Below, one piece after another: positions 6,179-25,732 of a stretch of DNA of 64,000 nucleotides (positions within the stretch are counted from its first letter, which is position 1; the number at the start of each line of letters is the position of its first letter). Made by a program: the position numbers and the translations under genes. Where the stretch lies: positions 230,035 through 294,034 of the IMG/VR virus record IMGVR_UViG_3300044568_003163; one strand, written 5' to 3'. The notes beneath the pieces are model-generated. The model saw only the letters and a list, made by a program, of their open reading frames with translations. It searched no databases and had not been told where the DNA came from.

Positions 6179-6229
6179 TCAATATTGCGGAAACTAAAAA
6201 ACTTTAAATGTTAAAAATCTGTTAAAGTT

Positions 6230-6706: not shown

Positions 6707-6714
6707 AATGTGTA

Positions 6715-6739
6715 GTTTTAATTAGATATGTAAATTTAA
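6715..6739 (-). promoter_or_regulatory. Putative early promoter block, copy 2
   Basis: TTAAATTTACATATCTAATTAAAAC; one mismatch to copy 1. Confidence 0.65.
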
Positions 6740-6788
6740 TCAAATAATTAGAAACAAGGAAATTTATTTCAATAAAGTTATTAACAAT

Positions 6789-6962: not shown

Positions 6963-6967
6963 AATAC

Positions 6968-7258: not shown

Positions 7259-7266
7259 AATGTGTA

Positions 7267-7291
7267 GTTTTAATTAGTTATGTAAATATAA
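7267..7291 (-). promoter_or_regulatory. Putative early promoter block, copy 3
   Basis: TTATATTTACATAACTAATTAAAAC; one mismatch to copy 1. Confidence 0.65.
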
Positions 7292-7293
7292 GC

Positions 7294-7323
7294 AAAAAAT
7301 CCGACACTAGGAAATGTCGGATT
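7294..7323 (-). terminator. Rho-independent terminator
   Basis: 9-bp stem AATCCGACA/TGTCGGATT with an 8-nt loop and T-run on the minus strand, 27 nt after the stop of 7351..7578. Confidence 0.75.
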
Positions 7324-7350
7324 AATTATTTTCAAAAAGTTATTAACAAT

Positions 7351-7578
7351 TTATTGTTCGTTAGTAAAGAATTTTGTTACTTGGTCTAAGTTTTCGTTTG
7401 CTACTGAGATGTGGTCTTCTGCCCAATCATGTCCATTCTTTAAGATTTCGTCCATTTTAATAGGATCCATAGCTAAAAGAATTTCAACATTTCTTTTGAT
7501 GGTTTTAAGATTTCCAATTGTCATATAGTTTTCAGCCTTTTCGTTTACAAATTCACTGAATGTAGGTAAGTGTTCCAT
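7351..7578 (-). CDS. Putative internal head protein (CTS-like N-terminus)
   Basis: Starts MEHLPTFSEFVNE. Confidence 0.65.
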   Translation of the reverse strand: MEHLPTFSEFVNEKAENYMTIGNLKTIKRNVEILLAMDPIKMDEILKNGHDWAEDHISVANENLDQVTKFFTNEQ

Positions 7579-7986
7579 TTACTTCAATAATTTTCTAATA
7601 TTTTCAATAACTATTGATCGATGATTGATAACTGCCTGAGCTTCTTTAGGATGTCTTTGCATAAGTTTTATCGTTTCTCTTGCCCAATTTTCTATTTCCT
7701 TTGTTAGCTCAAGAGTTTTAGGCCAGGTTGAATCGTTAACGACATCAAAATCTGGATTACCTTCTAGTGATTCAATTCCAGTTTCTACGCTTTTATCGAT
7801 GTTCGACCAATATCCACCTCCTTTAGAACTTATGATAGTTCCAACTGATACTTTTACTTTTCTAGTTCCTCTGATATTTTTAACTTCAGTGTCTTTATTA
7901 GCAATATATACATTCCAATATTCTCCACCTTTATCTAAAAATGTAGATTCATTTAAGAATTCTTCGTATGTAGGTAGTTTACTCAT
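7579..7986 (-). CDS. Putative internal head protein (CTS-like N-terminus)
   Basis: Starts MSKLPTYEEFLNE. Confidence 0.65.
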   Translation of the reverse strand: MSKLPTYEEFLNESTFLDKGGEYWNVYIANKDTEVKNIRGTRKVKVSVGTIISSKGGGYWSNIDKSVETGIESLEGNPDFDVVNDSTWPKTLELTKEIENWARETIKLMQRHPKEAQAVINHRSIVIENIRKLLK

Positions 7987-9482
7987 TATTTCTTTGTTTT
8001 CTTATTTTCAAATGTTATTCCAGCATGTGCACTTCCTTTAGCTTCACCTGGATGATATTCACCATCAAATGAAGTTACTACGAAAGTTTTATATGGCGAT
8101 ACTGAACAACCAATTCTTTCCATAAATTTACGATTAACTAAAAATTTAGTAGATTTATCTGTTCTATTAACTAATGAAACCTGAACCTCTTTGTAAGTTT
8201 TACCTGCAAATGCAATATCCATTTCAATTATAGGCCTTTCATCTATATCGTTACCAACTTCTGCGTTAGAAATTCCAATTATCTGATGTACGTATTTTTT
8301 GCCGTTCAATTCCCAATTACACTGTTTACCATCTTCGCTAATTTTCATTTTATCATAAGTCATAGAACATGAAAGTGAACCGTTTCCAGTATCAAATTTA
8401 GCAACAACATCACCAATTCCAGGAATTGTAATTACTTCTCTAAATCCAATAACTCTACGAGAACGAATCCAATTTTGTCTATCTGATAGAAAATCGATGA
8501 TGTCTTTAATAACATCTACACCAGTAGCTTTTTTTAATCCTTGTGTACCTGGAGATGAGTTAACTTCCAGTACATAGTTTTTACCTGTTTTCTCATCAAC
8601 GATAATATCAACTCCACACCAATTACAACCTACTGCCTTAGCCGATTCGATTGCAATTCTTTCTTGTTCTGGTGTTAATTTAGTTTTTTCAACAGAACCA
8701 CCTAATGAATAGTTAGTTCTAAAGTCTTTATCGACTTTGTTTCTTCTCATATAACCTAAAAGTACCGAGTCAGTATCTTCTGGTTTAGGCGAATTGAAAC
8801 GTTTAGTTAAAACGTGAATACGTAAGTCATATTCTGATTCGATTTTTTCTTGTATAAGAGTTTCTACAGTTGGATCTACTTTCCATAAAGTTTGTAATAC
8901 TGATTTAAGAGATGCCAATGAATCTATAATAGAAACTCCAATTCCTTGAGAACCAGAAAGCATTTTAAGAATTACAGGAAATTGTCCGCCGATTTGTTCA
9001 ACTGCCGGTTCGATAGAATCTTCTCCATCGACCATTGCCATTTTAGGAACTGGAAGACCAGCATCCATAAGCATTTTCGAAGTAACGTATTTGTTTTCGC
9101 ATGCTAAAACTGAACTTAGTGTGTTTACTACAAAAAAGTTATTGTCTTCTAATTGAGATACAATATCTCGAGTATAAGTATTTCTAACGATTCCTCTACG
9201 AGTTAAAATCGCAGTATCTTCGGAATCAATTTTAAAGGGTTTCTTGGTTTTATCAACGATAGTAAAATAATCTCCATCAGTACTTTTAGTTAACGAACAT
9301 GTGTTAACGTCAATGATACGGAATTCAATTCCACGTTTTTTACATTCTTTCTCAACTGCAGGAACGGTATATGATTCCTCACTGATATTTGAAAGGAGTA
9401 CAACCTTAACAGGATTTTTAGGTGTTGATTTTGTAGCCTCATTAATTACAAATTCGTTAAAGTATGCGAGACGGTTTTTCAT
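7986..9482 (-). CDS. rimK: RimK-family ATP-grasp ligase fused to a RimB-like (retropepsin-type) protease, CTS-like N-terminus
   Basis: ATP-grasp motifs ENKYVTSKML, PVILK...GSQGIGV, LIQEKI, DLRIHV, GVDII and EVNSSPG; C-terminal domain with AKFDTGNG (Asp364). Confidence 0.85.
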   Translation of the reverse strand: MKNRLAYFNEFVINEATKSTPKNPVKVVLLSNISEESYTVPAVEKECKKRGIEFRIIDVNTCSLTKSTDGDYFTIVDKTKKPFKIDSEDTAILTRRGIVRNTYTRDIVSQLEDNNFFVVNTLSSVLACENKYVTSKMLMDAGLPVPKMAMVDGEDSIEPAVEQIGGQFPVILKMLSGSQGIGVSIIDSLASLKSVLQTLWKVDPTVETLIQEKIESEYDLRIHVLTKRFNSPKPEDTDSVLLGYMRRNKVDKDFRTNYSLGGSVEKTKLTPEQERIAIESAKAVGCNWCGVDIIVDEKTGKNYVLEVNSSPGTQGLKKATGVDVIKDIIDFLSDRQNWIRSRRVIGFREVITIPGIGDVVAKFDTGNGSLSCSMTYDKMKISEDGKQCNWELNGKKYVHQIIGISNAEVGNDIDERPIIEMDIAFAGKTYKEVQVSLVNRTDKSTKFLVNRKFMERIGCSVSPYKTFVVTSFDGEYHPGEAKGSAHAGITFENKKTKK

Positions 9483-9966
9483 TTTTGCGTATATATTTTA
9501 TGAATGATTTCTGATTATCTATCATCATTCTCTTACATTTTTCAGTAAAAGCTAATGAAGATTCAATAACTCGTTGGTCTATTTTTTCGTTACCTTTAAG
9601 GTAGTATTTAAAACATTTTTCACAAGTAAAATTACTTGGAATGTATGTATCTATTCGAGATTGAATCTCTTTATTGCAATAAGCACAGTTCCAATCAAAT
9701 ATCTTATACGAATCTTTTACTAATGAATAAGAAGATATGTCTTTTGACCCTGGTTGAACAAATGGCCTATTCAAATGAGATACTCTTATTCTTCCATCTT
9801 CGATCCTAAAGATGGCATTTATAAAAAGGTCATCATCAGCATATTTCTTAACTACTGGATTTTCCTTTAGTATTCGTTGATGCCTAGGTGGAAGTCCTTT
9901 AAGTACGATTCCATATTTAGTAGGAGTTTTACCTAAGTTCTGTCTTTTTATATGATAATTAGCCAT
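9457..9966 (-). CDS. Hypothetical protein with two CxxC motifs (Zn-binding)
   Basis: CAYC and CEKC. Confidence 0.6.
   Translation of the reverse strand: MANYHIKRQNLGKTPTKYGIVLKGLPPRHQRILKENPVVKKYADDDLFINAIFRIEDGRIRVSHLNRPFVQPGSKDISSYSLVKDSYKIFDWNCAYCNKEIQSRIDTYIPSNFTCEKCFKYYLKGNEKIDQRVIESSLAFTEKCKRMMIDNQKSFIKYIRKNEKPSRIL
9489..9497 (-). promoter_or_regulatory. Putative late promoter (AATATATAC) upstream of the RimK fusion
   Basis: Same 9-mer as upstream of the portal gene (18780-18788); 6 nt before the ATG, inside the end of the upstream ORF. Confidence 0.4.
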
Positions 9967-12070
9967 TTATAGGATATTCATTCCATAAATTATTTAATCG
10001 TTCCTCTGCTAATGAAAGTATTGCGGATATTGTCCATAAATCAGTAGAATTACCTTCTTCGGCAGTTTCTTTATATTTATCGATAGCTGCTTTAGCTATA
10101 TCTAAATTAGCTTGAATTTTATCTACTTCAGTTTGTAGGATTTCCTTTTTAGCTTCATCGGTTTCATTCTTAAGCTCTTCTTTCTTTGAATCTAATCCGG
10201 TTTTGATTGCATCGTACTTTTCAGTTGCAGTACGAAGTTTAAATTCTTCGATAGTTTCTGTTTGTTCTTCTTCAGGAGCTTCTTTAGGAGATTCACTAGT
10301 AGCTTTCTCTAATTTTTCTGGATCAGTCTTTTTTGCTGATGCTTCACCTTGCTTTTCTGCTTCGTCTGACTTTTTTTCTAAGTCCTTCATCATTTCTATA
10401 GCCTTGTCTAATTGACCTTTAAGAGCTTTTTTCTTTTTATCACTAGGAATTAAAGTAGCAAGTTGAGTAAGAAATTCAACACGATTTTTAGCACGTTGTT
10501 TCGATATGTACAACCACGAAAAGAAATTAGCTTTACCTAATAGACCTCCAACTAATTCGTTGGTAGCATCTTTTTGATTTTCTACTGCTGAATCAATATC
10601 TTTCAATTGAGAAACATATGAATCGGTAGCAATTTCTACTTGTTCTCTAAAAGCTTCAAGTTTTTCTTCGTCAGTCATATCCGTATCTTCGCTTTTGAAA
10701 TTATCTTTAACGTCATCAACTTCTACTTGTGCCTTTCTTTTAGCAGTAGCCGCATCAGATATTTCCTTTTCTAGAGCTCTAATTTCAGCAGCATCTTCTT
10801 TTGGATCTAAATTAGCCTTTTCTTTTCTAAGTCTATTAAGTTTTTTATCGGCATTAGATAAATTAGACTTAGCTTGCTCTAATTTTTCTTTTGTCTTTTC
10901 GTTAGACTTTTTAATGTTTTTAAGTTCTTCTTCGTCTGAATCTTCTTCCTCTTCGGCATTTATATCGTCAGCAGTATCATCAGTTGCAGTTGCACCAGTA
11001 GGTCCAGTAGTTCCTTCTGGTTCTTTTTCGGTCGATGTAGTTGATCCGGTAGGACCTGTAGTTCCATCAATTGCAGTAGTTCCTTCTGGTTCCCTTTCAG
11101 AAGATGAAGTTGCACCAGTAGGTCCAGTAGTTCCTTCTGGGTTTTTAACTTCTGGCTCTTCTGCTGGAGTTTCTTCTTGCTTTAATTTTTCTATTTCGGC
11201 TTTAAGATTATCATAAGCTTCTTTTGCAGATTGTTTACCTTCAACAGATGAATTATCTAATTCTAATTTAAGTCGATCTAAATCAGCTAATTTAGACGCA
11301 AGTAAAGCTTCTTTTGCTTTTTTCTCTAATTCGGCTTTATCTAATTGGTCTTCTCCATCTTCTTTAAGATTAGAAATTTCCTTTTTGATTTTAGCAAATT
11401 TTTCATAGTTAACATAAGATTCCTGTCTTGCTTTTGCTATTTTCTTAGCGTCATTAGCATCGTCAGCCTTCTTAATGTCTTTCTGTTCAGCAGATAATTT
11501 AGCATTTTCTGCTTGATATTTTTTATGAGTTACTTCTAATTCTCGTCTCTTTTCTGGATCGTCGACAACAGAAGTTATTTTTTTCTTAATTGATTGAATT
11601 TCGTCTTTAACCTTAGCCTTAATTTTACTAATCTTTTCTAATTTATCAGTATCTGAAGCACCTTTAGGTTGTGGAGTAGTTTTAGGTTCAGTTGGTTTAG
11701 GAGTTTCCTTTGCCTTAGGTTCTACCTTAGGCTTAGGTGCATCTTTTTTCTTTGGTTCAACTTTGGCTTTCTTTGCAGGAGTTTTATCCGGTGCTTTAGG
11801 TTTAACTTTTTTAGATACCTTCCTAGCTTGTTTTCTTGCTGCTCTTTTTTGTGCAGCAGTTTGAACTTCAACTAAAGCAATATATTGTGGTAGACTTGAA
11901 AAGTCATATTCTTTTAATGATTCAAATACATCTCCTAATGTGGCATCCTCATCGACAAAAATATCGAAATCTTCACATATCGTTTCAAAAAGAGATTCTA
12001 ACAGATCTAAGTATATTTGATCGTTTACTTCTTCTTCGTATTTTTCTAATAAATAGTTGTTTAATTTCAT
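9959..12070 (-). CDS. Large Lys/Glu-rich low-complexity coiled-coil protein, putative head component
   Basis: 703 aa; K/P-rich linker, EGTTGPTG repeats and acidic tracts; downstream of the capsid gene. Confidence 0.7.
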   Translation of the reverse strand: MKLNNYLLEKYEEEVNDQIYLDLLESLFETICEDFDIFVDEDATLGDVFESLKEYDFSSLPQYIALVEVQTAAQKRAARKQARKVSKKVKPKAPDKTPAKKAKVEPKKKDAPKPKVEPKAKETPKPTEPKTTPQPKGASDTDKLEKISKIKAKVKDEIQSIKKKITSVVDDPEKRRELEVTHKKYQAENAKLSAEQKDIKKADDANDAKKIAKARQESYVNYEKFAKIKKEISNLKEDGEDQLDKAELEKKAKEALLASKLADLDRLKLELDNSSVEGKQSAKEAYDNLKAEIEKLKQEETPAEEPEVKNPEGTTGPTGATSSSEREPEGTTAIDGTTGPTGSTTSTEKEPEGTTGPTGATATDDTADDINAEEEEDSDEEELKNIKKSNEKTKEKLEQAKSNLSNADKKLNRLRKEKANLDPKEDAAEIRALEKEISDAATAKRKAQVEVDDVKDNFKSEDTDMTDEEKLEAFREQVEIATDSYVSQLKDIDSAVENQKDATNELVGGLLGKANFFSWLYISKQRAKNRVEFLTQLATLIPSDKKKKALKGQLDKAIEMMKDLEKKSDEAEKQGEASAKKTDPEKLEKATSESPKEAPEEEQTETIEEFKLRTATEKYDAIKTGLDSKKEELKNETDEAKKEILQTEVDKIQANLDIAKAAIDKYKETAEEGNSTDLWTISAILSLAEERLNNLWNEYPING
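10989..11140 (-). repeat. In-frame direct repeats encoding PEGTTGPTGAT
   Basis: Identical 32-mer GTTGCACCAGTAGGTCCAGTAGTTCCTTCTGG at 10989-11020 and 11109-11140, with degenerate partial copies between. Confidence 0.85.
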
Positions 12071-12748: not shown

Positions 12749-14371
12749 TTATACTAAAGAACCAAGAAGGTTAGACATAAATACACCTGAAGTGATATAC
12801 ATAGTTTCTGGTTTGAAACCTGCTTCAACTAAAGCGTATCTTGATTTAACAGCTACTTTAGGAGCCATAGTTCCTTCAGCAATTGTTTGTACTGATTCAG
12901 CCATTAAGTAAGGCATGAATACTAAACCTGGAGAGTTACCATCACCTTTACGTCCAACTAAGAAACGAGTATCGTTCCAAGCCATGTTAGGATCGTTGTA
13001 GATAGCAAGACCTGCAACAGTTCCAATTGGGTAAAGTGAACCACTCATTTGGTTAATAGTATTAGCCATAGGAGCAGGAACGAAACCAGCTATATCTTGT
13101 AGGGCAGAACATACTTGACCGTTTGTAACGATGAAAGTAGCTGGACCTCTACGACCTCTAATTGCAATAAGGTTAGCGATTGCAAGGATCTTAGACATAA
13201 TTTTTCTCTGACGAGTTGAAAGATTCTCAGAAGCTGAGTTTGTAACCTCAGAAGCAAGAATAGTTGCAGCTCTAAGAGTAGTATCTTGGATGTAAGCACC
13301 AAAGTTAGTTTGAGTGTTAGCAGATGTACCAGATACAACAATTGAAGTAGCACCAATGTTCAAGAAGAAGTTGATTCCTTGAGAGTTAACAACATTTTTG
13401 TGGTTAGTTTCTCCAAGAGCAAATAATCTAGAAAGGATGTTTTTGTTGATTGATTGAGTCAATTCATTGATAAGTACTGATTCTACTTGAGATACAGCAT
13501 CTACTCCGAATTGTTTCAAATCTTGAACTTGCTCTCTAGTAACAGCAGCTGCAACTTGGAAAGTTTTAGCTTCAACTGATTTGTTGAAAAGACTTAAGTT
13601 CATTACGTTGTCTGGAGTAGACTCACCTAAAGATCTAGAATATGGATCGTTAATATCATCTCCAGTATAATCGTTGTTAGTTAAAGCTTGACCTGAGAAT
13701 CCAGTGATGTGGTCTTCTAAAGCTTTTACTAATTCTACGTTTAATCCAGAAGTAGCACCAGTTACACCTGAGATACCTGAAGCACCTAAGATAGTAGTAA
13801 AAGTTGAAAGGATAGTAGCACCAGAAAGAGTACCTCTAACGTGGAAGATTGGATAACCATCTAAACGAGAAGATCCTACATAAGCAAGAGTAACTCCATT
13901 AGTTGAAGCAGAAGTTCCACCAACTACAAACGAAGGAACTGTAGCAGAACCATAGTTTACTTTGATTAATAATGGAGAATTTGTAGTAGAAGCAGTTTGA
14001 CCACCAGCATATACGAAGTCTAAGTAAGTTAATACTCCCATTGGACCAGGCATTGGTACAACAGGTACTAAGTCAAGACCAATAGTTTGAGCAGCAACTT
14101 GCATTGCTAATGGAAGAAGTGTGTGAGCTTTATCACCTGAACCAGCTTCTTGACCTGGGAAACCAGCTTGAGTACCTGGATCTCCAGGGAAACGAGTTGC
14201 ACCCATACCGTTTACAGAACCTAATTGAGCTAAGCTATTGTTTTCATACAATTCATGATAATGACAGTATTTAGACATCCACTCTACTCTATTACGCTCT
14301 TGAATTCCTGTAGTAGACTCAATGATTGGAGCCCATTTACCGAATATTTCTTGTTCGTTAATTAAATACAT
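12749..14371 (-). CDS. gp23: Major capsid protein (gp23-like)
   Basis: KWAPI, DLVPVVPMPGPMG, SVEAKT, VLINELTQSINK, GLVFMPY and PKVAVKSRYAL motifs; biased codon usage; strong terminator. Confidence 0.95.
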   Translation of the reverse strand: MYLINEQEIFGKWAPIIESTTGIQERNRVEWMSKYCHYHELYENNSLAQLGSVNGMGATRFPGDPGTQAGFPGQEAGSGDKAHTLLPLAMQVAAQTIGLDLVPVVPMPGPMGVLTYLDFVYAGGQTASTTNSPLLIKVNYGSATVPSFVVGGTSASTNGVTLAYVGSSRLDGYPIFHVRGTLSGATILSTFTTILGASGISGVTGATSGLNVELVKALEDHITGFSGQALTNNDYTGDDINDPYSRSLGESTPDNVMNLSLFNKSVEAKTFQVAAAVTREQVQDLKQFGVDAVSQVESVLINELTQSINKNILSRLFALGETNHKNVVNSQGINFFLNIGATSIVVSGTSANTQTNFGAYIQDTTLRAATILASEVTNSASENLSTRQRKIMSKILAIANLIAIRGRRGPATFIVTNGQVCSALQDIAGFVPAPMANTINQMSGSLYPIGTVAGLAIYNDPNMAWNDTRFLVGRKGDGNSPGLVFMPYLMAESVQTIAEGTMAPKVAVKSRYALVEAGFKPETMYITSGVFMSNLLGSLV

Positions 14372-14446
14372 TTAAAATGTTTTATTTTGTTTTATGTTTT
14401 GATTTACGCTGATGCTTTTTGTGTTTTAGCAGTATTTAGCGTTTAA

Positions 14447-14481: not shown

Positions 14482-15102
14482 TTATAATAAGTTAACCTTT
14501 TCTAAAGATTCTAAGTTAGATTCAATTCCGTCTATTAGATTCGATATTAAAGTTTCGTATTGTTTAACATATTCATCAGTTAATATAGAAGCTCTTTCTG
14601 GATTATTTGCAAACATACTCCAATCAATACCTGAAGGTTTTAATAAAGGAGAATTTTCATCTGCAGCCGGTTTAGAATTTACTGAACCTTTTCTCATTTC
14701 TAACCCAAAATCATTATACCAGAAAGTCATTGCATTTCTTACATCAGTTATGTCTAACCTTGGTTCTTTTGATCGGTTTAAATTAGGAGCAAGAGTTCCG
14801 TAATTTTGATGTTCTTTGACAATTACTTTACGAATTTTAATAAGTTTTGAATATCCCATCATTGGTGAATATTCGATACAAAAAAGAGCTTGACCCTTAG
14901 AATTGTAAAGTTGTACACTTTCATAAGAAGGAGCTGTTTGTATACCATATTTAGAAAATATTCTTTTCAAATCTTTTCCTAGAAAATCTTTTGTGATTTT
15001 CGAAACTTGTTTGGCTATATCTAATTGATTAGGTTCTAACGAAGCTTTTTCATTAAGAATGGATTCATTAATAAATTCAGCAAATGTTAATAAATTCTTC
15101 AT
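14482..15102 (-). CDS. Putative internal head protein (CTS-like N-terminus)
   Basis: Starts MKNLLTFAEFINESILNE; lies between the protease and capsid genes. Confidence 0.7.
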   Translation of the reverse strand: MKNLLTFAEFINESILNEKASLEPNQLDIAKQVSKITKDFLGKDLKRIFSKYGIQTAPSYESVQLYNSKGQALFCIEYSPMMGYSKLIKIRKVIVKEHQNYGTLAPNLNRSKEPRLDITDVRNAMTFWYNDFGLEMRKGSVNSKPAADENSPLLKPSGIDWSMFANNPERASILTDEYVKQYETLISNLIDGIESNLESLEKVNLL

Positions 15103-15173: not shown

Positions 15174-17087
15174 TTATCTGTTAAATCTTCTTCTTAATTC
15201 AGCTTCTACGGTTTCCATGTAATTAGCCGGAGTTTTATATTCTGCAGTTTCATTAACAATTGCTGGTGCAGCACCTTCATTTAATGGAGCATCAATTTTA
15301 ACTGATCTTAAATCTCTAGTAGCCCAGAAATCATCGATTTTATATTGATTATCTAAAACTTTTACTGAAGCTTGAGCCTTAATTGAATTTCTTTGAGATT
15401 CATTTAAGTTATTCCAAGAGTCTTTGTATTTAGCTGGCATATTAGTTAACCAATTTGTAACTGGTCTAAATGCAATAAATGCAGATTCATATAATCTTTC
15501 AGCATCAACTGAACCATAGAATTTGTTATTTTCAAAAACTGCAATAACTTCGTCTTTTTTCTCAGGAGTTAATGCATCAAATTGATTTCTCTTGTTTTCT
15601 GATAGGAAATTCAAGAAGTGTAATTTGTTAGCATCTACTGATTCATTAACAGTTTTTGCATTTTCTAAAATAGTATTTAATTTGTCGGTTAATGTCTTTT
15701 GGAAAGCATCTTCTTCATTACCTTCAATTTTATCTACGATAGTTCTTTTTGGATTTGAATGTAATACTAAGTTTTCGTCGATTGATTGAGTACCTTCTAA
15801 ACCAGTAACTTTACCTTCATTAATTTCTTTAACGATGTGATTAAGATAACCTGCAAGATTTTGTGTATTTTCTTTTAAGTACTCAGTATATTCAATGATT
15901 GATGATGTACCTTCAACAATATAATCGTTATGAGAAATTACATTATCTAATTGCTCATTCATATGTTGTTGATAAGCCCAACGTGAGTTAGATTCATTAG
16001 CAAGATATTTACTAAATTCAATATTTTGATCTGCCTTTTCTGCAACAACTTTAGTATATTCAATACCTCTATCGCTCATTTCAGCAACTAATTTAGTATA
16101 CTCAATTAAGTGGTCAACCGATTCAGAAAGTTTTTCTGAGTAGTTAATTCCTTGATTAGATTTTTCACCAACTAATTCTGCATAATTTTTAACTCTTTCA
16201 AGATTTTCAATGATATAATCATTATGAGAAATTAAGCCATCAACTGATTCTGCTAGTTTTTCAACATAAGAATTAATTTGATTAACTCTTTTTGCAGTTT
16301 CTTCGGTGTAACGTATCAATCCTTCATTAACAGATGAAGAATCTTTAGCTGATGATTCGGTTAAAGACTTTTTAAGATTTTCTACTTCGTTTTTAACATG
16401 TTTAGTATATTCGTTAAAATCTTCAACGGTAATGTATTTTTTAGGATCCATTTTGTCGTTTTTTGTTTCGTTTATTGGGTTTGGGGTTGGTTCTTCTTGT
16501 TGATAGATTAAAACAGGCATATCAGATTCGCTCAAATCAGACTCTATTTCATAGATCTGTGTTAATGAATCGTTGTCTAATCCAAAAGATTCGTTTACTC
16601 TTTTCAATTCGGCATTAGCAAATCCAGGATCTGCAACTAAATCGTAAGTAAACATTTTTTTAATTTTAACATGGCCATTAGATTCAACAACACCGGCAGC
16701 TCTAGAAGAAATATGAAGAGGTACACCAGCATCTACTAATGCCATTGCTTGTTTTCCAGCATCAGTATTAAGTAATCTGATTCTACCAGTAACTTTTTTG
16801 CTAGCTTTATCGTATTGAATGTCTTCAATAATATGTGAAGCATTCTTTAACGATATATCAAAAGATTTAGGGTGGTCAAGTTCTCCAAGAAGTTTATTAC
16901 CTTTAAGTTTTTCTTGTAAGTCTTGTATGTGTGGCATTAACTCAGCTTCATCGTAAATACGATTATTCTTGTTTCTAATGCCTATTTCGGTGAAAACACC
17001 TTCCAACACATATTTATCTCCATCCTTAGAAGATGTAAGATTTCCTTCCGATCTTTCTAATACAAGTAGATATTTATTATTGCTCAT
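15174..17087 (-). CDS. gp21: Prohead protease (gp21-like) fused to a scaffold-like repeat domain
   Basis: N-terminal RNKNNRIY, GELDHP (His), ISSRAAG (Ser) and TYDLVADPGF; long helical C-terminal extension. Confidence 0.9.
   Translation of the reverse strand: MSNNKYLLVLERSEGNLTSSKDGDKYVLEGVFTEIGIRNKNNRIYDEAELMPHIQDLQEKLKGNKLLGELDHPKSFDISLKNASHIIEDIQYDKASKKVTGRIRLLNTDAGKQAMALVDAGVPLHISSRAAGVVESNGHVKIKKMFTYDLVADPGFANAELKRVNESFGLDNDSLTQIYEIESDLSESDMPVLIYQQEEPTPNPINETKNDKMDPKKYITVEDFNEYTKHVKNEVENLKKSLTESSAKDSSSVNEGLIRYTEETAKRVNQINSYVEKLAESVDGLISHNDYIIENLERVKNYAELVGEKSNQGINYSEKLSESVDHLIEYTKLVAEMSDRGIEYTKVVAEKADQNIEFSKYLANESNSRWAYQQHMNEQLDNVISHNDYIVEGTSSIIEYTEYLKENTQNLAGYLNHIVKEINEGKVTGLEGTQSIDENLVLHSNPKRTIVDKIEGNEEDAFQKTLTDKLNTILENAKTVNESVDANKLHFLNFLSENKRNQFDALTPEKKDEVIAVFENNKFYGSVDAERLYESAFIAFRPVTNWLTNMPAKYKDSWNNLNESQRNSIKAQASVKVLDNQYKIDDFWATRDLRSVKIDAPLNEGAAPAIVNETAEYKTPANYMETVEAELRRRFNR
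15810..16313 (-). repeat. Twelve tandem 14-aa repeats in the scaffold domain
   Basis: Units such as SYVEKLAESVDGLI, NYSEKLSESVDHLI, EYTKLVAEMSDRGI and EYTKVVAEKADQNI; SHNDYI occurs twice. Confidence 0.85.
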
Positions 17088-17143: not shown

Positions 17144-18757
17144 TTACATTCCTGTTGCTTCGGCATCCTTTTTGGCTGCTTCTCTTCTTTCTACATCTTC
17201 GATGTCTTTTAGTTTCTTGTTAAGACGTAAATCGTCATTAGATAAACCTAAGAATCTTTGTATTAAGAATTCAGAAGCAAAGTATTTTACTTCGTTCATG
17301 TTTGCATCAGTATCAACAAGACCATCTTTCATCGAAGTTACGAAGTCTAATCTTTTCTGTAAGATTTCAATTTCTTTCATCTCTTCAAAGATGTTCATTG
17401 TGTTATATTTTACACCGATTTGGGCTTTAAACGCATCGTCTTCTTTTATTTCAGGAAAGTCTAAACACATTTGAATCCAAAGTGGTTTTGTAAGTATTTC
17501 TTGGAAAACTGAACGTAAACGAGTAACAAAACGTCCAAATTTAATCTCGTCTCTAGTCATACCCTCGGCATTCATTTCCCATGAAGGTGGGGATTCCATA
17601 TCAAAACGGGAAAGTGGAATTTTAGATACTTTAATTAATTTCTCTCTGAAGTATTTAAGAGCATCAGTATCTGAAAGGTCTGGACCATCGTTTCCAATAG
17701 TCTCTATTGTAGGTTCACCAGCATCACCTGATGGCAACCAATATTCTTTGTTAAATGGCATCATTGCTTTACCATTAACTTTTAATTCACCAGATTCAGT
17801 ATCAAAATCTATTTGCTCTCGGTAGTTTTGCATTAAAACTCCAAGAGATTGTTTTGCTCTAGTTTTTGATTTACCACCAACCGGAATTACAAATTTAGTT
17901 TTAAACGAAGCATTAACAGTAGCCCAAATAACTCTTGAGTGTTCCATAATTCTAAGTAAGTTAAAAGAACGAATAAGTCTTTCAACATAAGAAACTCGAT
18001 TTACAGTATTAACGTTAGCATAAGAGATGTAAATAACTTGAGAATCATAAACAACTCTTTCCTTATTTGGCATACCTTTAAATTGTTTCCAAATTTTCTT
18101 ACCTTCTTTATCGATTCCAGGTTCAAGATTTATTGGATCTAATTCTTTAAATCCTATAATTCTTGATTGTTCTTTGTCGTAAATTATCTCAAATGCAAGA
18201 TAACCATCAACTAACCATTTTCTAAAGTAAGACCAAGCGGCAATATCATTATTGAATCCAAAGTATTGATAGATTCTTTTAAAATTAGTATCTAAAGCGA
18301 TTTTAACTGCTTCTAATGTTGTAGGTTCTAATGTATCATCATCAAAAGATAATGGCATACAAAAGTAATTTTTATCATCATAAACTACACATTCATCACA
18401 AAGAGTATCAAGAATATCTTCTATCTCATCTTGGATAGCGAATTTTCTAAGGTCTTCTCTTTTCTTAGGATATGATTTATCAAAGATGGAAATTGATTTA
18501 CGAAGATTGATATCGGTCATCGATAGATTAGCGAAAAGTGCATAATCATCGTATTCTCCTCCAGCAACATTTCTCGGATCAAGTCTCCAACCATATTGGT
18601 CTTCGTTGATACCGATAGCTTTGGAATTCTTCAGCACCATATCATCATACATCATTCCAAAGGAAGATAATGATTTAAGTGCTTTGCTGACGATATTTCT
18701 CGAAGCCGGTGTTGGTTTACCGTTTGAGGTTTCGTCTCTATTTACAAATCCTGGCAT
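17144..18757 (-). CDS. gp20: Portal vertex protein (gp20-like)
   Basis: FRKWLVDG, LRIMEHSRVIW, EYWLP and ETI motifs; order portal-protease-capsid as in T4. Confidence 0.93.
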   Translation of the reverse strand: MPGFVNRDETSNGKPTPASRNIVSKALKSLSSFGMMYDDMVLKNSKAIGINEDQYGWRLDPRNVAGGEYDDYALFANLSMTDINLRKSISIFDKSYPKKREDLRKFAIQDEIEDILDTLCDECVVYDDKNYFCMPLSFDDDTLEPTTLEAVKIALDTNFKRIYQYFGFNNDIAAWSYFRKWLVDGYLAFEIIYDKEQSRIIGFKELDPINLEPGIDKEGKKIWKQFKGMPNKERVVYDSQVIYISYANVNTVNRVSYVERLIRSFNLLRIMEHSRVIWATVNASFKTKFVIPVGGKSKTRAKQSLGVLMQNYREQIDFDTESGELKVNGKAMMPFNKEYWLPSGDAGEPTIETIGNDGPDLSDTDALKYFREKLIKVSKIPLSRFDMESPPSWEMNAEGMTRDEIKFGRFVTRLRSVFQEILTKPLWIQMCLDFPEIKEDDAFKAQIGVKYNTMNIFEEMKEIEILQKRLDFVTSMKDGLVDTDANMNEVKYFASEFLIQRFLGLSNDDLRLNKKLKDIEDVERREAAKKDAEATGM

Positions 18758-20026: not shown

Positions 20027-20770
20027 TTAGAATTTAGATTTAGCAGTAAACCAATAGATTTCAAAGCCTCCGTATTTCTCTCCCATACATAATACATTCA
20101 TTGTCGAATCAAAAGTTATATAATCATCTGCTTCTGCCTTTGGGAAATCCTTGATTTCCGCACCTCTAAATTTAGATTTCAACGCTTTATATGTGTCATA
20201 TAAATCATCGTCAAAATTTTCATCGAGACCAAATACATCTTTTGGTTCGGCTCCTAAATGTTTACATATTTCTCTTACTAATTCCTGTAACGGTTTGTCA
20301 TCACCTTTCTCATCAATATAAGTTTGAGCATCGAATTCTCCACTTAATTCAGCGATGGCTTTAGCAACACTTAGTTTACCTTCGTTAATCGTAGAAGAAC
20401 TAGAAGTTCTTACTAATCTACGAGAGTTTTTTTTAGAGGTAGAAACACCTTCTAAAACTTGTACAAAACCACCTTTAGCAATAACATCAGCAATTTCAAC
20501 ATCGGTCATCTGAACGTCATTAGCTTTGTCTTCACCATTAAATAAGTGAACTCCATCGGTTACACCTGCATAGTACATGTCAGTGTTAACGTTTCCATCT
20601 ACTGTGATAACATATTCTTTACCAGGTAACAATTCAGAAACTGAAGTTAAAGCTGGACCAGTTGGATCTTGTCCTGTAGTATTTTGTGGGTTGAATCCAT
20701 CAGCATCAGTAGCCTCCTGAATCTTGTAATGTTCGTTTACGAACTCGTCAAATGATAATAATTTTTTCAT
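20027..20770 (-). CDS. Putative internal head protein (CTS-like), two-domain
   Basis: Starts MKKLLSFDEFVNE; ends FTAKSKF like the neighbouring gene. Confidence 0.7.
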   Translation of the reverse strand: MKKLLSFDEFVNEHYKIQEATDADGFNPQNTTGQDPTGPALTSVSELLPGKEYVITVDGNVNTDMYYAGVTDGVHLFNGEDKANDVQMTDVEIADVIAKGGFVQVLEGVSTSKKNSRRLVRTSSSSTINEGKLSVAKAIAELSGEFDAQTYIDEKGDDKPLQELVREICKHLGAEPKDVFGLDENFDDDLYDTYKALKSKFRGAEIKDFPKAEADDYITFDSTMNVLCMGEKYGGFEIYWFTAKSKF

Positions 20771-20795
20771 TTTTAATTTATTGTTGTTTTTATTT

Positions 20796-21203
20796 TTATT
20801 TGATAAATTTAGATTTAGCAGTAAAGAAATAACTAATCATTCCATTATCTTCTGCTCTAACTACATTAGATTTTGTAAAATGATTTAAGTCTTCTCCCAT
20901 ACTGAAATCATTACTTGCAATAGATTTTGTTTCCGGAGTCATTCCGTTATATTCACTATCGATTTCATCAAAAAGCTGAACAAGATCGTCTTCCATTTCT
21001 TCTGAGCTTACCATAAAAATTTCAGTTGGTTTTGCTTTAAGAGCTTTAATTATTAAGTCGTATCCGTGATATTCACCTTCTATCTCTGTTATGTTCGGTA
21101 AATCTCTTGATTTTATAGCATCTTTGAAGAATGTTTCTTCATTTAGTGAGTTTAATTTGCTTGATTCATTTATAAATTCAGCAAAAGATAGTAAATTTTT
21201 CAT
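20796..21203 (-). CDS. Putative internal head protein (CTS-like), paralogue of the 20027..20770 C-domain
   Basis: Starts MKNLLSFAEFINE; ends FTAKSKFIK; late-motif variant at 21220-21229. Confidence 0.7.
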   Translation of the reverse strand: MKNLLSFAEFINESSKLNSLNEETFFKDAIKSRDLPNITEIEGEYHGYDLIIKALKAKPTEIFMVSSEEMEDDLVQLFDEIDSEYNGMTPETKSIASNDFSMGEDLNHFTKSNVVRAEDNGMISYFFTAKSKFIK

Positions 21204-21224
21204 TTGTTGTTTTTGTTTTTATAT

Positions 21225-21749
21225 TTATCCAATGTATGTTGGGTAACTTCCTCCAGATGCAGAATCCGTAGTGTTTCGATACCCTTTAACTTTTGGATTA
21301 GAATCTGCAGCAGATACAGGATTTAATGTACCAGTACCAACCATTTCCGCTTCTTCAACTTCTTCTCCTTCTTTTTTCTTAGGAGGATTTTCTTCTAATT
21401 CCTTTTTTAATTCCTTTTGAGCAACTACAGCTTCTGGATTTTGAATCTTTTCAGCTTTATCTCTGATTTTATTCATTTCTTCTTGACTTAATTCATCCTT
21501 AAGAATAAAAGTAGAAGGCTTTTCATTAGTAAATATTTTACTTCGGAAATAATCAAATACAAAAACTAATTTGTCTTGATCGTATACATTAAAAGTTTTA
21601 GAAAATGCGTCTTGTTCAAATCTATATTTTTCTAGATTTTCTATTTTCCATGCAGACCACCATTCTGGAGTCATAGCATATACTCGATTTAGATTAGATA
21701 GGCTAACGGATTCATTAACAAAATCTGCAAATTTTAAAAGACGATTCAT
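21225..21749 (-). CDS. Putative internal head protein (CTS-like)
   Basis: Start moved to MNRLLKFADFVNE (21749), which removes the overlap with gp55. Confidence 0.65.
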   Translation of the reverse strand: MNRLLKFADFVNESVSLSNLNRVYAMTPEWWSAWKIENLEKYRFEQDAFSKTFNVYDQDKLVFVFDYFRSKIFTNEKPSTFILKDELSQEEMNKIRDKAEKIQNPEAVVAQKELKKELEENPPKKKEGEEVEEAEMVGTGTLNPVSAADSNPKVKGYRNTTDSASGGSYPTYIG

Positions 21750-24063: not shown

Positions 24064-24741
24064 TTATTTATACACAGCACATGTAATAGATTTACCATAT
24101 AGTGGTATTAATGCTTCCATGTGTGCAGATTCAATGTAATCAACCATAGTACCAGTAAATAATGGTCTACCGGTTTGATCGTGACTGAAATGTCCTTGAG
24201 TTCCTATTTGCCATAATGGATTAGAACCTGAAGTAATTACTGCTCTGTATTTTTCGTCTCCATTAGTTTTCCAAATTTCAATAGTAGAAGCACCATTAGT
24301 TTTTACGTTGAAGTACTTATTTTCACCTGAAGTAAGATTTAAACTACCACAAGGTAAAATAGCACAACCACCACCTCGATAACCACTACTAAATTGTCTA
24401 GTAGTTTTGAATTGTTCAGAAGAAGGTCTTTTTGAGCCAGGTAAAACGTTGATGGAATTCATCGATTTATCAACATCCATTCCTAATGAACCAGCTCGAT
24501 CAAAGAATACCTTTGTTACTGGATGATCTGATCCGAGAATTTGATCTGCGGCAACACCTCTATCGAATGCTTTATTTTTGTCTGTAATTAACTTACACAT
24601 TGTGTTAGCTAACATTAACATTTTAGATTCATCTCCTTTAGATTTTGTAACAATATCATTAATTCGTTGTAGGTCTTTTTGAGTAGCTTCAAGAACTAAA
24701 GACTCTAAAATAAAATCTTCGTATGTTTGTAAATTTTTCAT
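24064..24741 (-). CDS. Putative internal head protein (CTS-like)
   Basis: Starts MKNLQTYEDFILESLVLE. Confidence 0.7.
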   Translation of the reverse strand: MKNLQTYEDFILESLVLEATQKDLQRINDIVTKSKGDESKMLMLANTMCKLITDKNKAFDRGVAADQILGSDHPVTKVFFDRAGSLGMDVDKSMNSINVLPGSKRPSSEQFKTTRQFSSGYRGGGCAILPCGSLNLTSGENKYFNVKTNGASTIEIWKTNGDEKYRAVITSGSNPLWQIGTQGHFSHDQTGRPLFTGTMVDYIESAHMEALIPLYGKSITCAVYK

Positions 24742-24742
24742 G

Positions 24743-25732
24743 TTATTTAGCAGCTCCTACACCTTTAAGGTTAGGATATCTTTTTAAAACTGATGCAACT
24801 ACTTGTTTTTTCAAGTCTGCATATTGTGGCCATGTAGCCCAAACTAATGCAGTTTTTGCATGTTTCTCGTCGTGTATTGGCCATGCTTTACGATCAGGAA
24901 ATACAAAATCTGTAGGTTTCAATTTATCCTTTTCGGTTTGAGATAACTTCTCAAGAACTTTATGATAGTCTAAAACAGATTCTAAAACCTCATCTTCAAG
25001 ACCAGTCATATCAAATCCCATAGATTCAGAAAGAATCTTTTTGATTTTTTCCATTTTCTGAGCATCTTTTAGAGCATCTTTTAGAGCATCAATTTTTGCA
25101 GTATCTTCAGAACTTTCTCCTTCAGGTTTTTCTTCACCTTCTTTAGATTTTTCTTCATCATCTTTAAGTTTATCTAAAGCTTGTTTAACTCCGTCATCAG
25201 TTTTTGCTTTTGATGGGTCAATTCCTTTAGCTAAATCTTTTGTGTCAGCTTTAAGGATATCGTCCTCTTCTTCATAGAGACCACCTTTAGATTCTTGTAT
25301 GAAATCGATATCTTCAACATCAAATTCGTAATCTGAACCATCTTCGGTATATCCGGTAAATTGAGTTCCCTTTTCACCTTTTAATTCTTTTGGATCGACA
25401 CTATACCAATCGTTCTTAATGAAAACGGTTACTGGCTTTCCATTAGTTTGAGTATATAGGTCATGAGCAGTTTTTCCTTTGAATCTACTTCTAGATGCTT
25501 CACTTAATGCATCAGTGTCTATTGATTCGTTTAAGAATACCTTTTTAAGTACATTTATTTTTCTCTCTTCATCGACTCCAATTGTAGTCAAGAAAAGATA
25601 TATTTGTTCTGGATTTTTTCCTTCAGATGCTAGTTTCTGAACAATTGGAAATAAAGAACCAGCTCCGTAATACGAATATTGACCGAATAGATTCTCATTT
25701 ACGAATTCTTCGTATGATTTAATTTTTGACAT
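24743..25732 (-). CDS. Putative internal head protein (CTS-like), modular
   Basis: Starts MSKIKSYEEFVNE; acidic linkers; C-terminal FVFPDRKAWPIHDEKHA module; late motif at 25752-25760. Confidence 0.7.
   Translation of the reverse strand: MSKIKSYEEFVNENLFGQYSYYGAGSLFPIVQKLASEGKNPEQIYLFLTTIGVDEERKINVLKKVFLNESIDTDALSEASRSRFKGKTAHDLYTQTNGKPVTVFIKNDWYSVDPKELKGEKGTQFTGYTEDGSDYEFDVEDIDFIQESKGGLYEEEDDILKADTKDLAKGIDPSKAKTDDGVKQALDKLKDDEEKSKEGEEKPEGESSEDTAKIDALKDALKDAQKMEKIKKILSESMGFDMTGLEDEVLESVLDYHKVLEKLSQTEKDKLKPTDFVFPDRKAWPIHDEKHAKTALVWATWPQYADLKKQVVASVLKRYPNLKGVGAAK

What the first reader, a model, noticed from the sequence alone, without database searches (positions are those of the whole stretch)
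15174..17087. Prohead protease fused to a scaffold built from twelve 14-aa units, most with a protease-type site
Seen: 15810-16313 encodes 12 exact-length 14-residue units. Nine have hydrophobic-x-Glu at positions 6-8 (LAE, IIE, VGE, LSE, VAE, VAE, MNE, IVE, LKE). No separate gp22 gene lies between protease and capsid. Known: T4 encodes gp21 and gp22 separately, and gp21 cleaves after (I/L/F)-x-E. Inference: a self-digesting scaffold whose repeat count might act as a ruler for head size.
Basis: partly seen in the sequence, partly recalled or inferred. Interest (0 to 1): 0.6.

Follow-up and report, generated by a model that had tools for sequence, protein, structure and literature searches.

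The report
Protease fused to a repeat scaffold
A 294-kb phage encodes its T4-type capsid-maturation protease in one gene with a helical rod of twelve 14-residue units, and each unit carries the protease's cutting motif, which is also the short tag that phage T4 uses to load proteins into its head.

Summary
Window 15174..17087 (- strand) is one 637-aa ORF. It has an N-terminal T4 gp21-type protease, then a disordered linker, then a helical region holding 12 in-register 14-aa units (aa 259-426). A second linker and a conserved helical C-terminal domain follow. Lag-14 self-similarity is 27 SD above shuffles. Nine units have hydrophobic-x-Glu at one fixed position, as do 85% of 2,319 units in relatives. 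The family is large (more than 4,000 metagenomic homologues) and reaches phages of 462-735 kb. No gp22-type scaffold was found in the genome.

Three points are new. The unit's first half (Y-S/T-E-Y/H-I/L/V-A-E) is the same motif as T4's capsid-targeting leader MKTYQEFIAE. Thirty-eight other ORFs of this genome start with such a leader. A Met at position 213 is conserved in relatives and has a gene-start-like A-rich context, which suggests a nested, protease-less scaffold product.

The best reading is a fused or nested protease-scaffold that is cut into 14-mers. No biochemical evidence supports it. The ruler idea is not supported. Unit number rises from 12 to 14 to 16 only across one clade of huge phages, and it varies from 5 to 13 among genomes of about 250-340 kb. 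This is a new variant of a known kind.

The parts
15174..17087 (-). Whole ORF, 637 aa: protease-scaffold fusion (P0001)
   Evidence: more than 4,239 homologues of similar length
16578..17054 (-). Prohead protease domain, about aa 12-170 (Peptidase S77/S80, T4 gp21 type). His72 and Ser127 are invariant.
   Evidence: Pfam PF03420 E 1.5e-12 and phrog_207 E 2e-40; BLASTP to T4 gp21 E 2e-12 aligns H72/S127 with H85/S140; Foldseek 5JBL E 1.6e-8; invariant columns in A2
16452..16577 (-). Variable linker aa 171-212, largely disordered (AF2 pLDDT <50 over aa 184-214), with candidate autocleavage sites IYE180, LSE187 and INE207 (VNE166 lies just upstream in the protease domain)
   Evidence: AF2 pLDDT <50 for 184-214; motif list; poor conservation in A1/A2
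16449..16451 (-). In-frame ATG for Met213: candidate internal start of a nested 425-aa scaffold-only product (15174..16451)
   Evidence: Met present at or within a few residues of this column in all but 2 (L022, L024) of 49 aligned relatives, inside an otherwise variable linker. The 20 nt upstream are 63% A, like true gene starts (61%) and unlike other in-frame ATGs (41%), p 8e-36
16314..16427 (-). Helical segment aa 221-258 before the array, with invariant D223-F224
   Evidence: AF2 helix 221-247; A2 invariants
15810..16313 (-). Array of 12 x 14-aa units, aa 259-426. Family consensus is Y-[TS]-[ED]-[YH]-[VIL]-A-E-x-[LV]-D-x-x-[IW]-x. Two conserved 'SHNDY' units are units 3 and 10.
   Evidence: AF2 helices 251-287, 290-352, 359-423; indels between relatives come in multiples of 14 aa
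15717..15809 (-). Second disordered, variable linker, aa 427-457
   Evidence: AF2 pLDDT <50 for 425-458; length-variable and low-complexity in relatives
15288..15716 (-). Conserved helical C-terminal domain, aa 458-600 (invariant Y582, F587, W588, R591). It has no Pfam family and no solved structural relative.
   Evidence: AF2 pLDDT 80.7 alone; Foldseek and VIA-align give no clear match, best Z 5.9; module shared with Tenacibaculum phage PTm1 ORF300, hhalign 93.7%, E 1.9e-7
15183..15227 (-). Terminal amphipathic basic helix, aa 621-635 (ends ...RRRFNR), conserved as ...RFKR/K in relatives
   Evidence: AF2 helix 621-635; A1/A2 consensus
17144..18757 (-). Upstream neighbour: T4 gp20-type portal
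   Evidence: PF07230 E 1e-72
12749..14371 (-). Downstream: gp23-type major capsid protein. Its N-terminal region has invariant INE6 and LYE43 and nearly invariant IIE18.
   Evidence: PF07068 E 5e-36; A4 conserved columns
14482..15102 (-). 206-aa ORF between protease and capsid genes. It starts MKNLLTFAEFINES (CTS-like leader) and is one of 38 such ORFs in the genome.
   Evidence: absent at this position in relatives

Best explanation
The gene encodes a T4 gp21-type serine prohead protease fused in frame to this phage's head scaffold (core) protein. The scaffold part has three pieces. The first is a long alpha-helical rod built from twelve 14-residue amphipathic units. The second is a flexible linker. 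The third is a conserved helical C-terminal domain with a basic terminal helix, which probably anchors the protein to the capsid shell or portal. Each unit carries aromatic-x-acidic-aromatic-aliphatic-A-Glu. This is the same motif as the T4 capsid-targeting leader, which gp21 cuts after the Glu. After the prohead closes, the protease would therefore cut the rod once per unit into peptides of about 14 residues, small enough to leave the shell. It would also free itself at sites in the linker. A conserved internal Met213 with a gene-start-like context probably gives a second, protease-less product. That would let scaffold outnumber protease, as in lambda C/Nu3, Mu I/Z and herpesvirus UL26/UL26.5. 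Shown by computation: the domain architecture, the repeat, motif conservation, absence of a gp22 homologue, and the conserved Met. Inferred: the scaffolding role, cleavage at each unit, internal initiation, and the binding partner of the C-terminal domain.
For: Protease. Repeat and its significance. Helical prediction and domain layout. The fixed-position hydrophobic-x-Glu occurs in 9 of 12 units here and in 1,961 of 2,319 units in relatives. Site density is 5.65 per 100 aa, the highest of all ORFs of 250 aa or more in the genome (median 2.2); T4 gp22 has 8.55. No PF25623 or phrog_237 hit in the 294-kb genome. Gene order is portal, fusion, capsid, conserved in relatives of 462-735 kb. T4 IPII and IPIII start MKTYQEFIAE (read from the T4 record). 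Units read YSEYIAE in relatives. gp21 degrades gp22 to peptides and removes CTS leaders (PMC9958956, PMC5694885). Internal Met. A cultured relative, Tenacibaculum phage PTm1 ORF300, is also fused and shares the C-terminal module. It has different 16-aa units that each end in LSE, SAE or QAE, so it follows the same design independently.
Against: There is no experimental data for this family. No sequence or profile homology to T4 gp22 was found or to the PAU gp152 scaffold. The C-terminal domain has no structural relative. AF2 confidence in the rod is low (pLDDT 41-68, monomer). The complex prediction of the C-terminal domain with the capsid protein gave no verdict. Hydrophobic-x-Glu is a short motif, and Glu-rich helices carry it often. 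CheckV rates the genome 91% complete, so a scaffold gene in a missing part cannot be fully excluded. A 703-aa charged protein (9959..12070) downstream of the capsid gene is unexplained.
Confidence: 0.68

Rival explanations
1. The C-terminal 450 residues are not the scaffold. They are only a tether that carries the protease into the prohead, like the C-terminal targeting tail of the HK97 protease. The real scaffold is another protein, or the capsid protein's own N-terminal propeptide.
For: Prohead proteases of T4, phiKZ and SPN3US have C-terminal parts that are auto-cleaved (PMC5694885). There is no homology to gp22. An unexplained 703-aa highly charged protein lies just downstream of the capsid gene. 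The complex test gave no verdict.
Against: A tether does not need about 450 residues, 12 conserved units, a conserved 140-aa domain and a conserved internal Met. The capsid propeptide is only about 43 aa up to the invariant LYE43. No gp22-family hit exists in the genome. In relatives the capsid gene follows the fusion directly, and the genes after the capsid gene differ between the relatives examined.
Confidence: 0.17
2. The repeat rod is mainly a docking array for cargo. Its units pair helix-to-helix with the CTS-like leaders of the 38 leader-bearing proteins, so the protein loads internal or ejected proteins into the head. Shell scaffolding would be secondary.
For: The unit's first half and the leaders share one motif. 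T4 CTS-bearing proteins associate with the core through the CTS, and the localising mechanism is called 'mysterious' (PMC9958956, PMC5694885). The leaders also occur in relatives next to the head genes.
Against: The shared motif is explained as well by one protease recognising both. With the full 14-column unit profile, the leaders do not score above chance (2 of 38 above the 99.9% shuffle level). The resemblance covers only the seven residues before the cut.
Confidence: 0.1
3. The repeat number is a molecular ruler that sets head size.
For: Units are 12 (294 kb), 12 (462 kb), 14, 14, 14 (635-642 kb) and 16 (735 kb). Spearman rho is 0.84 for 7 near-complete genomes. Indels come in whole units in the middle of the array, between two conserved 'SHNDY' units. 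Coiled-coil length tracks T number in HK97, D3 and T5 (PMC12749128).
Against: The trend rests on one related clade. 294 kb and 462 kb have the same count. Among 17 relatives estimated at 250-345 kb, units range from 5 to 13 with rho 0. Close relatives (52-53% identity) carry 17-18 units. Twelve units as a helix are about 25 nm, well short of the roughly 65 nm inner radius expected for such a head. That radius is my estimate from phiKZ-size capsids, not a measurement.
Confidence: 0.12

Closest known systems
Phage T4 gp21 (prohead protease) plus gp22 (scaffolding core protein)
   Same: Same protease family, fold and catalytic His/Ser. Same gene neighbourhood (portal, protease, scaffold, capsid). 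The scaffold is helical, acidic and rich in hydrophobic-x-Glu sites, and gp22 carries several (L/I/V)-A-E motifs. gp21 degrades gp22 into small peptides.
   Different: T4 has two genes and here there is one ORF. No detectable homology to gp22 (PF25623 absent; hhalign 1-3%). T4 gp22 has no 14-aa array (best lag 8, score 57). The conserved C-terminal domain here has no T4 counterpart.
Nested or fused protease-scaffold genes: lambda C/Nu3, Mu I/Z, P2 gpO, herpesvirus UL26/UL26.5 (from my own knowledge of the literature)
   Same: The protease is N-terminal and the scaffold C-terminal in one frame. A probable internal in-frame start gives scaffold alone. The scaffold is removed by its own protease.
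   Different: Those proteases belong to other families and those capsids are not gp23-type. None is built from a regular short repeat with one site per unit. Internal initiation here is inferred only.
T4 capsid targeting sequence (CTS) of internal proteins IPII/IPIII, MKTYQEFIAE
   Same: The motif aromatic-x-E-aromatic-I/L/V-x-E is found at the N-terminus of 38 ORFs of this genome. One example is MKKLPTYEEFIAEAY, and relatives have MKRVKSYNEFIAES. The same motif forms the first half of each scaffold unit.
   Different: In T4 it is reported as conserved only in IPII and IPIII (PMC9958956) and is not known as a building block of the scaffold. Here it occurs 12 times in tandem inside the scaffold and on about 10% of the ORFs called here (38 of 390).
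Tenacibaculum phage PTm1 ORF300 ('prohead core scaffolding protein and protease', 564 aa) and pT24 homologue
   Same: S77 protease fused to a long helical extension directly upstream of the capsid gene. It shares the C-terminal module MP-x-[KR]-Y...W..L.ES.K...FW (hhalign 93.7%). Its repeat units each end in x-x-E.
   Different: The units are 16 aa with an unrelated sequence (IEKWI...LSEG). There is no conserved Met at the domain boundary. The database name is the generic gp21 label, not a described fusion.
HK97/D3/T5 capsid-protein delta (scaffold) domains
   Same: A coiled-coil scaffold element removed by the protease. Its length correlates with T number (PMC12749128).
   Different: In those phages the element is fused to the capsid protein, not the protease, and is not a regular repeat.

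Membership tests
Peptidase S77 (T4 gp21 prohead core protease) | Profile match above the curated threshold | tested here: met
   PF03420 47.8 bits against a cut-off of 27; also PF20034 (S80) and phrog_207 E 2e-40
Peptidase S77 (T4 gp21 prohead core protease) | gp21 / herpesvirus-protease-like fold | tested here: met
   The AF2 model matches 5JBL chains at E 1.6e-8, probability 1.00, TM 0.64 by target
Peptidase S77 (T4 gp21 prohead core protease) | Catalytic His and Ser conserved | tested here: met
   H72 and S127 align with T4 H85 and S140 and are invariant in 49 relatives. That these are the catalytic residues is from memory of the gp21 literature.
Peptidase S77 (T4 gp21 prohead core protease) | Cleaves after Glu in (L/I)-x-E | not testable with these tools
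   Indirect only: conserved hydrophobic-x-E in the leaders, the units and the capsid N-terminus
T4_CASP / gp22 scaffolding protein (PF25623, phrog_237) | Sequence or profile similarity to gp22 | tested here: not met
   No Pfam or PHROG hit on the protein or in the genome. BLASTP E 0.3. hhalign probability 0.9% and 3%. The gp22 profile was shallow (70% identity or more), so distant homology is not excluded.
T4_CASP / gp22 scaffolding protein (PF25623, phrog_237) | Helical, site-rich protein encoded between protease and capsid genes | tested here: met
   AF2 helices 221-423; 5.65 sites per 100 aa against a genome median of 2.2; position
Nested or fused protease-scaffold arrangement (lambda C/Nu3 type) | Protease and scaffold in one reading frame | tested here: met
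   A single 637-aa ORF, conserved in length and architecture in over 4,000 homologues
Nested or fused protease-scaffold arrangement (lambda C/Nu3 type) | Internal in-frame start that yields scaffold alone | tested here: inconclusive
   Conserved Met213 with a start-like A-rich context. There is no protein or ribosome-profiling evidence, and the RNA runs found are assembled contigs that cannot show ends.
Nested or fused protease-scaffold arrangement (lambda C/Nu3 type) | Scaffold C-terminus binds the capsid protein | tested here: inconclusive
   The complex prediction gave no verdict
T4-type capsid targeting sequence | Leader of about 10-14 aa at the N-terminus, ending in (I/L/V)-x-E | tested here: met
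   38 of 390 ORFs. The T4 leaders were read from the T4 record.
T4-type capsid targeting sequence | Targets the protein into the prohead core and is removed by the protease | not testable with these tools
   Needs virion or prohead proteomics
Length ruler (tape-measure-like) | Unit number scales with head or genome size | tested here: inconclusive
   rho 0.84 for n=7 but one clade drives it; no relation below 350 kb (units 5-13). Most sizes are CheckV estimates.

The most novel reading that the evidence does not exclude
The T4-type capsid-targeting sequence is a detached scaffold unit. The scaffold rod is a tandem array of CTS modules, and the 38 leader-bearing proteins each carry one module. 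That module would let them co-assemble with the rod by helix pairing, and the same cut would release them. This would give a structural mechanism for how proteins are localised in the prohead core, which T4 reviews call unresolved. It would also make unit number a determinant of cargo load, and possibly of core size.
Probability: 0.2. Interest if true: 0.8.

Novelty: new variant of a known kind. Interest (0 to 1): 0.6.

Why it matters
[quoted passage not shown] This family offers a candidate scaffold for a very large, globally distributed group of jumbo and huge phages, including the 735-kb record holder. The design is simple and testable: one protease, a modular rod with one cut site per 14 residues, and a conserved anchor domain. 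The identity between the unit motif and the T4 targeting leader links scaffold, cargo loading and proteolysis in one sequence element. It also flags about 10% of this phage's ORFs as likely head-internal or ejected proteins. A cultured relative with the same architecture (Tenacibaculum phage PTm1) makes experiments possible.

Tried and rejected
1. Homology of the scaffold part to T4 gp22 was sought by BLASTP, Pfam and PHROG scans, and hhalign with a single sequence and with a 12-sequence gp22 alignment. Nothing was significant. A 22-column stretch (gp22 197-219 against aa 458-480) recurred at E 0.015-0.06 and was not accepted.
2. Homology to the Sphingomonas phage PAU gp152 scaffold and to the extension of Listeria phage LIS04 was sought. 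None was found.
3. The C-terminal domain was searched for a structural relative with Foldseek PDB and VIA-align wide. The best hit was Z 5.9 (PDCD5), below what helical proteins reach by chance.
4. A complex of the capsid protein with the C-terminal domain was predicted. It gave no verdict (0.22 against a mark of 0.32), which is evidence neither for nor against binding.
5. ESM Atlas look-ups of the scaffold part and of the 703-aa neighbour gave no usable hits.
6. RNA evidence for an internal transcript was sought. Nine lake, freshwater or marine metatranscriptome runs hold small shares of the stretch, but only as assembled contigs, which cannot show ends.
7. I tested whether the phage is one of the published bS21-encoding freshwater phages of 293-331 kb (PMC9723584). 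The gene cluster looks alike, but no S21 gene is detected in this genome, so identity is not claimed.
8. The leaders were scored with the full 14-column unit profile. They do not pass, so the resemblance is limited to the seven residues up to the Glu.
9. TRF on the window found no DNA repeat.
Full report
WHAT IS THERE. Window 15174..17087 on the minus strand is one 637-aa ORF. It lies between a T4 gp20-type portal gene (17144..18757, PF07230 E 1e-72) and a gp23-type major capsid gene (12749..14371, PF07068 E 5e-36). The window is the last 64 kb of a single 294,034-bp viral contig that CheckV rates 91% complete. Other T4-like head and late genes sit nearby: gp2 DNA end protector, gp4 head closure, a gp55-like late sigma factor and a gp46-like nuclease.

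THE PROTEASE DOMAIN. Residues about 12-170 match Peptidase_S77 (47.8 bits against a cut-off of 27), Peptidase_S80 and phrog_207 (E 2e-40). BLASTP to T4 gp21, read from the T4 record, gives E 2e-12. It aligns His72 and Ser127 with gp21 His85 and Ser140. Both residues are invariant in 49 relatives. The AlphaFold2 model of the whole protein has pLDDT 79-87 over most of this domain and matches the gp21 crystal structure 5JBL (Foldseek E 1.6e-8, probability 1.00).

THE REPEAT. Cutting aa 259-426 (nt 16313..15810) into 14-mers gives twelve units in one register. The lag-14 self-similarity score is 175. The best lag that is not a multiple of 14 scores 40. Shuffles of residues 215-430 give 31 +/- 5.4 for the best of lags 3-59, so z is about 27. 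Nine units carry [LIVMF]-x-E at the same position, and no other offset has more than one. The region holds 13 such motifs against 5.6 +/- 1.9 expected. Tandem Repeats Finder sees nothing in the DNA, so the units are old and are kept alike at protein level. One statement needs correcting: a 206-aa ORF (14482..15102) does lie between this gene and the capsid gene. That ORF is not a gp22 relative, and relatives lack it at that place.

THE REST OF THE PROTEIN. AlphaFold2 (49-sequence alignment, mean pLDDT 62) predicts a disordered linker at 184-214. It predicts long helices at 221-247, 251-287, 290-352 and 359-423, with pLDDT 41-68 as expected for a monomer of something that probably oligomerises. 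A second disordered linker spans 425-458. A compact helical domain spans 458-600 (pLDDT about 80-89), and a terminal helix spans 621-635. Folded alone, the C-terminal 185 residues reach pLDDT 80.7. That domain has no Pfam family and no convincing solved relative: no Foldseek match at E 0.001 or better, and a best VIA-align Z of 5.9.

RELATIVES. The word-index search returned more than 4,239 homologues at E 1e-5 or better. The listed ones are 520-712 aa and carry only the S77/S80 Pfam labels. Some are mis-named 'methyl-accepting chemotaxis protein' by their sources. IMG/VR held 580 confirmed loci. In the phage collection, the full-length relatives are the huge phages LR756500 (462 kb), LR756504, LR756502 and LR745206 (635-642 kb) and LR756501 (735 kb). 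In all of them the order is portal, fusion, capsid with nothing in between.

THE UNIT ACROSS THE FAMILY. The 14-aa period is the top lag in every relative, and there the units are far more regular, for example YSEYIAENLDKNIA. In these relatives the array is also a 42-bp DNA tandem repeat, with 10.7 copies at 82% matches in LR745206. A profile built from about 1,400 distinct units gives the consensus Y-[TS]-[ED]-[YH]-[VIL]-A-E-x-[LV]-D-x-x-[IW]-x. Of 2,319 units counted in 207 proteins, 1,961 (85%) have hydrophobic-x-Glu at unit positions 5-7. Length differences between relatives are whole multiples of 14 residues. They fall in the middle of the array, between two conserved units that read SHNDY.

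IS THERE ANOTHER SCAFFOLD? T4 gp22 belongs to PF25623 and phrog_237. Neither family has any match in the 294-kb genome, even at E 10. The scaffold part shows no significant similarity to gp22 by BLASTP (E 0.3) or by hhalign (probability 0.9% and 3%). It shows none to the annotated scaffold gp152 of Sphingomonas phage PAU, which keeps protease and scaffold as two genes. So the protein is not a member of the gp22 family on present evidence. It does behave like gp22 in three ways: where it is encoded, its helical character, and its site density. It has 5.65 hydrophobic-x-Glu per 100 residues, the highest of all ORFs of 250 aa or more in this genome (median 2.2 and 95th percentile 4.7, computed over ORFs of 150 aa or more). 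T4 gp22 has 8.55 and gp21 has 5.19.

FUSIONS IN CULTURED PHAGES. Long gp21-type fusions also exist in cultured phages. Tenacibaculum phage PTm1 ORF300 (564 aa) and Listeria phage LIS04 gp60 (559 aa) lie directly before their capsid genes. Flavobacterium phage MaF61 ORF140 is 1,404 aa. BFVD lists many 'prohead core protein serine protease' entries of 500-1,074 aa. PTm1 shares the C-terminal module of this family (hhalign 93.7%, E 1.9e-7). Its rod, however, has unrelated 16-residue units that each end in LSE, SAE or QAE. That is the same design reached with another unit.

THE MOTIF IS THE T4 TARGETING LEADER. Several neighbouring ORFs begin alike, so I scanned the genome. Thirty-eight of 390 ORFs, all on the minus strand, start with M-K-N-[IL]-[PQL]-T-[FY]-[ED]-[ED]-F-[IVL]-N-E. 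T4 IPII and IPIII, read from the T4 record, start MKTYQEFIAE. This is the capsid targeting sequence. It brings proteins into the prohead core, and gp21 removes it (PMC9958956, PMC5694885, PMC3012670). One ORF here starts MKKLPTYEEFIAEAY. Relatives have MKRVKSYNEFIAES beside the head genes, and in those phages the scaffold units read YSEYIAEN or YSEYVAEK. The first seven residues of the scaffold unit and the last seven of the leader are therefore one motif: aromatic-x-acidic-aromatic-aliphatic-x-Glu. The second half of the unit is not shared, and leaders do not pass the full 14-column profile. Shared recognition by one protease is the minimal explanation. A shared assembly interface is the more interesting one, and it is untested. 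The capsid protein's N-terminus also keeps INE6 and LYE43 invariant and IIE18 nearly invariant.

A PROBABLE NESTED GENE. This phage has no Shine-Dalgarno sequences, and its genes are preceded by A-rich runs. Met213 sits in the variable linker, yet a Met is present at or within a few residues of that column in all but two of 49 relatives. It is also present in the 462-735 kb phages. Across 74 distinct homologous genes, the 20 nt before this ATG are 63% A. That matches real gene starts (61%) and contrasts with other in-frame ATGs (41%) and random in-gene positions (40%). Mann-Whitney gives p 8e-36, with the caveat that the sequences are related. This fits an internal start giving a 425-aa scaffold without protease. 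In T4 the core holds about 580 gp22 but only 55-100 gp21 (PMC9958956, PMC5694885), so a 1:1 fusion alone would be an odd stoichiometry. Nested protease and scaffold genes are classical in lambda, Mu and herpesviruses; that point is from my own knowledge.

THE RULER IDEA. Unit counts by profile are 12 (this phage), 12 (462 kb), 14, 14, 14 (635-642 kb) and 16 (735 kb). For seven genomes at least 80% complete, Spearman rho is 0.84 (p 0.017). The four largest are one related clade, so this amounts to one or two independent contrasts. For 17 genomes under 350 kb (15 of them contig fragments), sizes came from contig length and CheckV completeness, except the window's 294 kb, which is its contig length. 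Among them, units range from 5 to 13 with rho 0. Across all homologues the count runs from 5 to 18 with modes at 9 and 11-12. Close relatives with 17-18 units exist on short contigs of unknown genome size. As an alpha-helix, twelve units would span about 25 nm. That is much less than the inner radius I would expect for a capsid of this genome size; this figure is my estimate. Scaffold coiled-coil length does track T number in HK97, D3 and T5 (PMC12749128), so the idea is reasonable in kind, but these data do not support a simple rule.

WHAT WAS NOT SETTLED. The one complex prediction allowed (capsid protein with the C-terminal domain) gave no verdict. It counts neither way. The RNA runs found hold the region only as assembled contigs, which cannot show transcript ends, so no reads were laid. 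No S21 gene is found in this genome. I therefore do not equate it with the published bS21 phages of 293-331 kb that have a similar head-gene cluster (PMC9723584).

VERDICT. The feature is real and conserved. It is best read as a T4-type prohead protease fused, and probably nested, with a modular, self-digesting scaffold. Protease-scaffold fusion is a known kind. The new elements are its occurrence with an S77 protease and a gp23-type capsid, a rod made of short regular units with one cut site each, and the identity of that unit's motif with the T4 capsid-targeting leader carried by about 10% of the genome's ORFs. The head-size ruler is not supported.

Noticed in passing
whole genome G000; in the window at 7351..7578, 7579..7986, 14482..15102, 20027..20770, 20796..21203, 21225..21749, 24064..24741, 24743..25732, 42215..42784, 42786..43448, 43459..43710, 43715..44047, 51389..51715: 38 of 390 ORFs begin with a shared leader, M-K-N-[IL]-[PQL]-T-[FY]-[ED]-[ED]-F-[IVL]-N-E, that closely matches the T4 capsid targeting sequence MKTYQEFIAE. 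They are likely head-internal or ejected proteins. Pfam finds almost nothing in ten of the larger ones; one has a weak cytidylyltransferase-like hit.
   Followed up: partly
window 14482..15102 (-): The 206-aa leader-bearing ORF between the protease and capsid genes is absent at this position in relatives, where the capsid gene follows the fusion within about 30-180 nt. It looks like a lineage-specific insertion.
   Followed up: partly
window 9959..12070 (-): A 703-aa protein that is extremely rich in K, E, D, T and P, with short PEGTTGPTGxT-like repeats and long charged helical stretches. It has no family, and the Atlas look-up gave nothing. Its function is unknown, and it remains a conceivable alternative core or decoration protein.
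   Followed up: partly
window, upstream of all gene starts (e.g. 14372..14401, 20771..20800, 21204..21233): There are no Shine-Dalgarno sequences. Gene starts are preceded by A-rich, G-poor runs, and nearly all genes are on the minus strand. This fits a Bacteroidota-type host, as do the nearest cultured relatives (Tenacibaculum, Flavobacterium and Prevotella phages).
   Followed up: partly
window 12749..14371 (-), first 45 codons: The capsid protein's N-terminus keeps hydrophobic-x-Glu motifs across relatives: INE6 and LYE43 are invariant in 26 and IIE18 is nearly invariant. LYE43 is a candidate maturation cut, analogous to T4 gp23 Glu65.
   Followed up: partly
L010 (Flavobacterium phage MaF61, PQ858689) 4908..9122: An annotated 'putative prohead scaffold' of 1,404 aa whose N-terminus is the gp21-type protease. 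It is an even longer fusion and has no strong short-period repeat.
   Followed up: no
G001 (IMGVR contig of 429 kb, same phage type as LR756500) 417679..417855: A second, weak S77 match (E 2.6e-4, 135-aa open frame) far from the head genes. It may be a diverged protease paralogue like the one reported in SPN3US-type giant phages.
   Followed up: no
window 7986..9482 (-): A 498-aa protein matching phrog_2599 ('ribosomal protein S6 glutaminyl transferase', RimK-like; E 5e-18). This genome has no S21 gene (PF01165 not found), although similar freshwater phages carry one next to the head genes.
   Followed up: no
L004 6867..7314 and L005 6871..7265: In the 635-735 kb relatives the scaffold array is a 42-bp DNA tandem repeat (72-82% matches). 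This points to recent amplification or homogenisation, whereas the window's array has diverged beyond DNA-level detection.
   Followed up: yes
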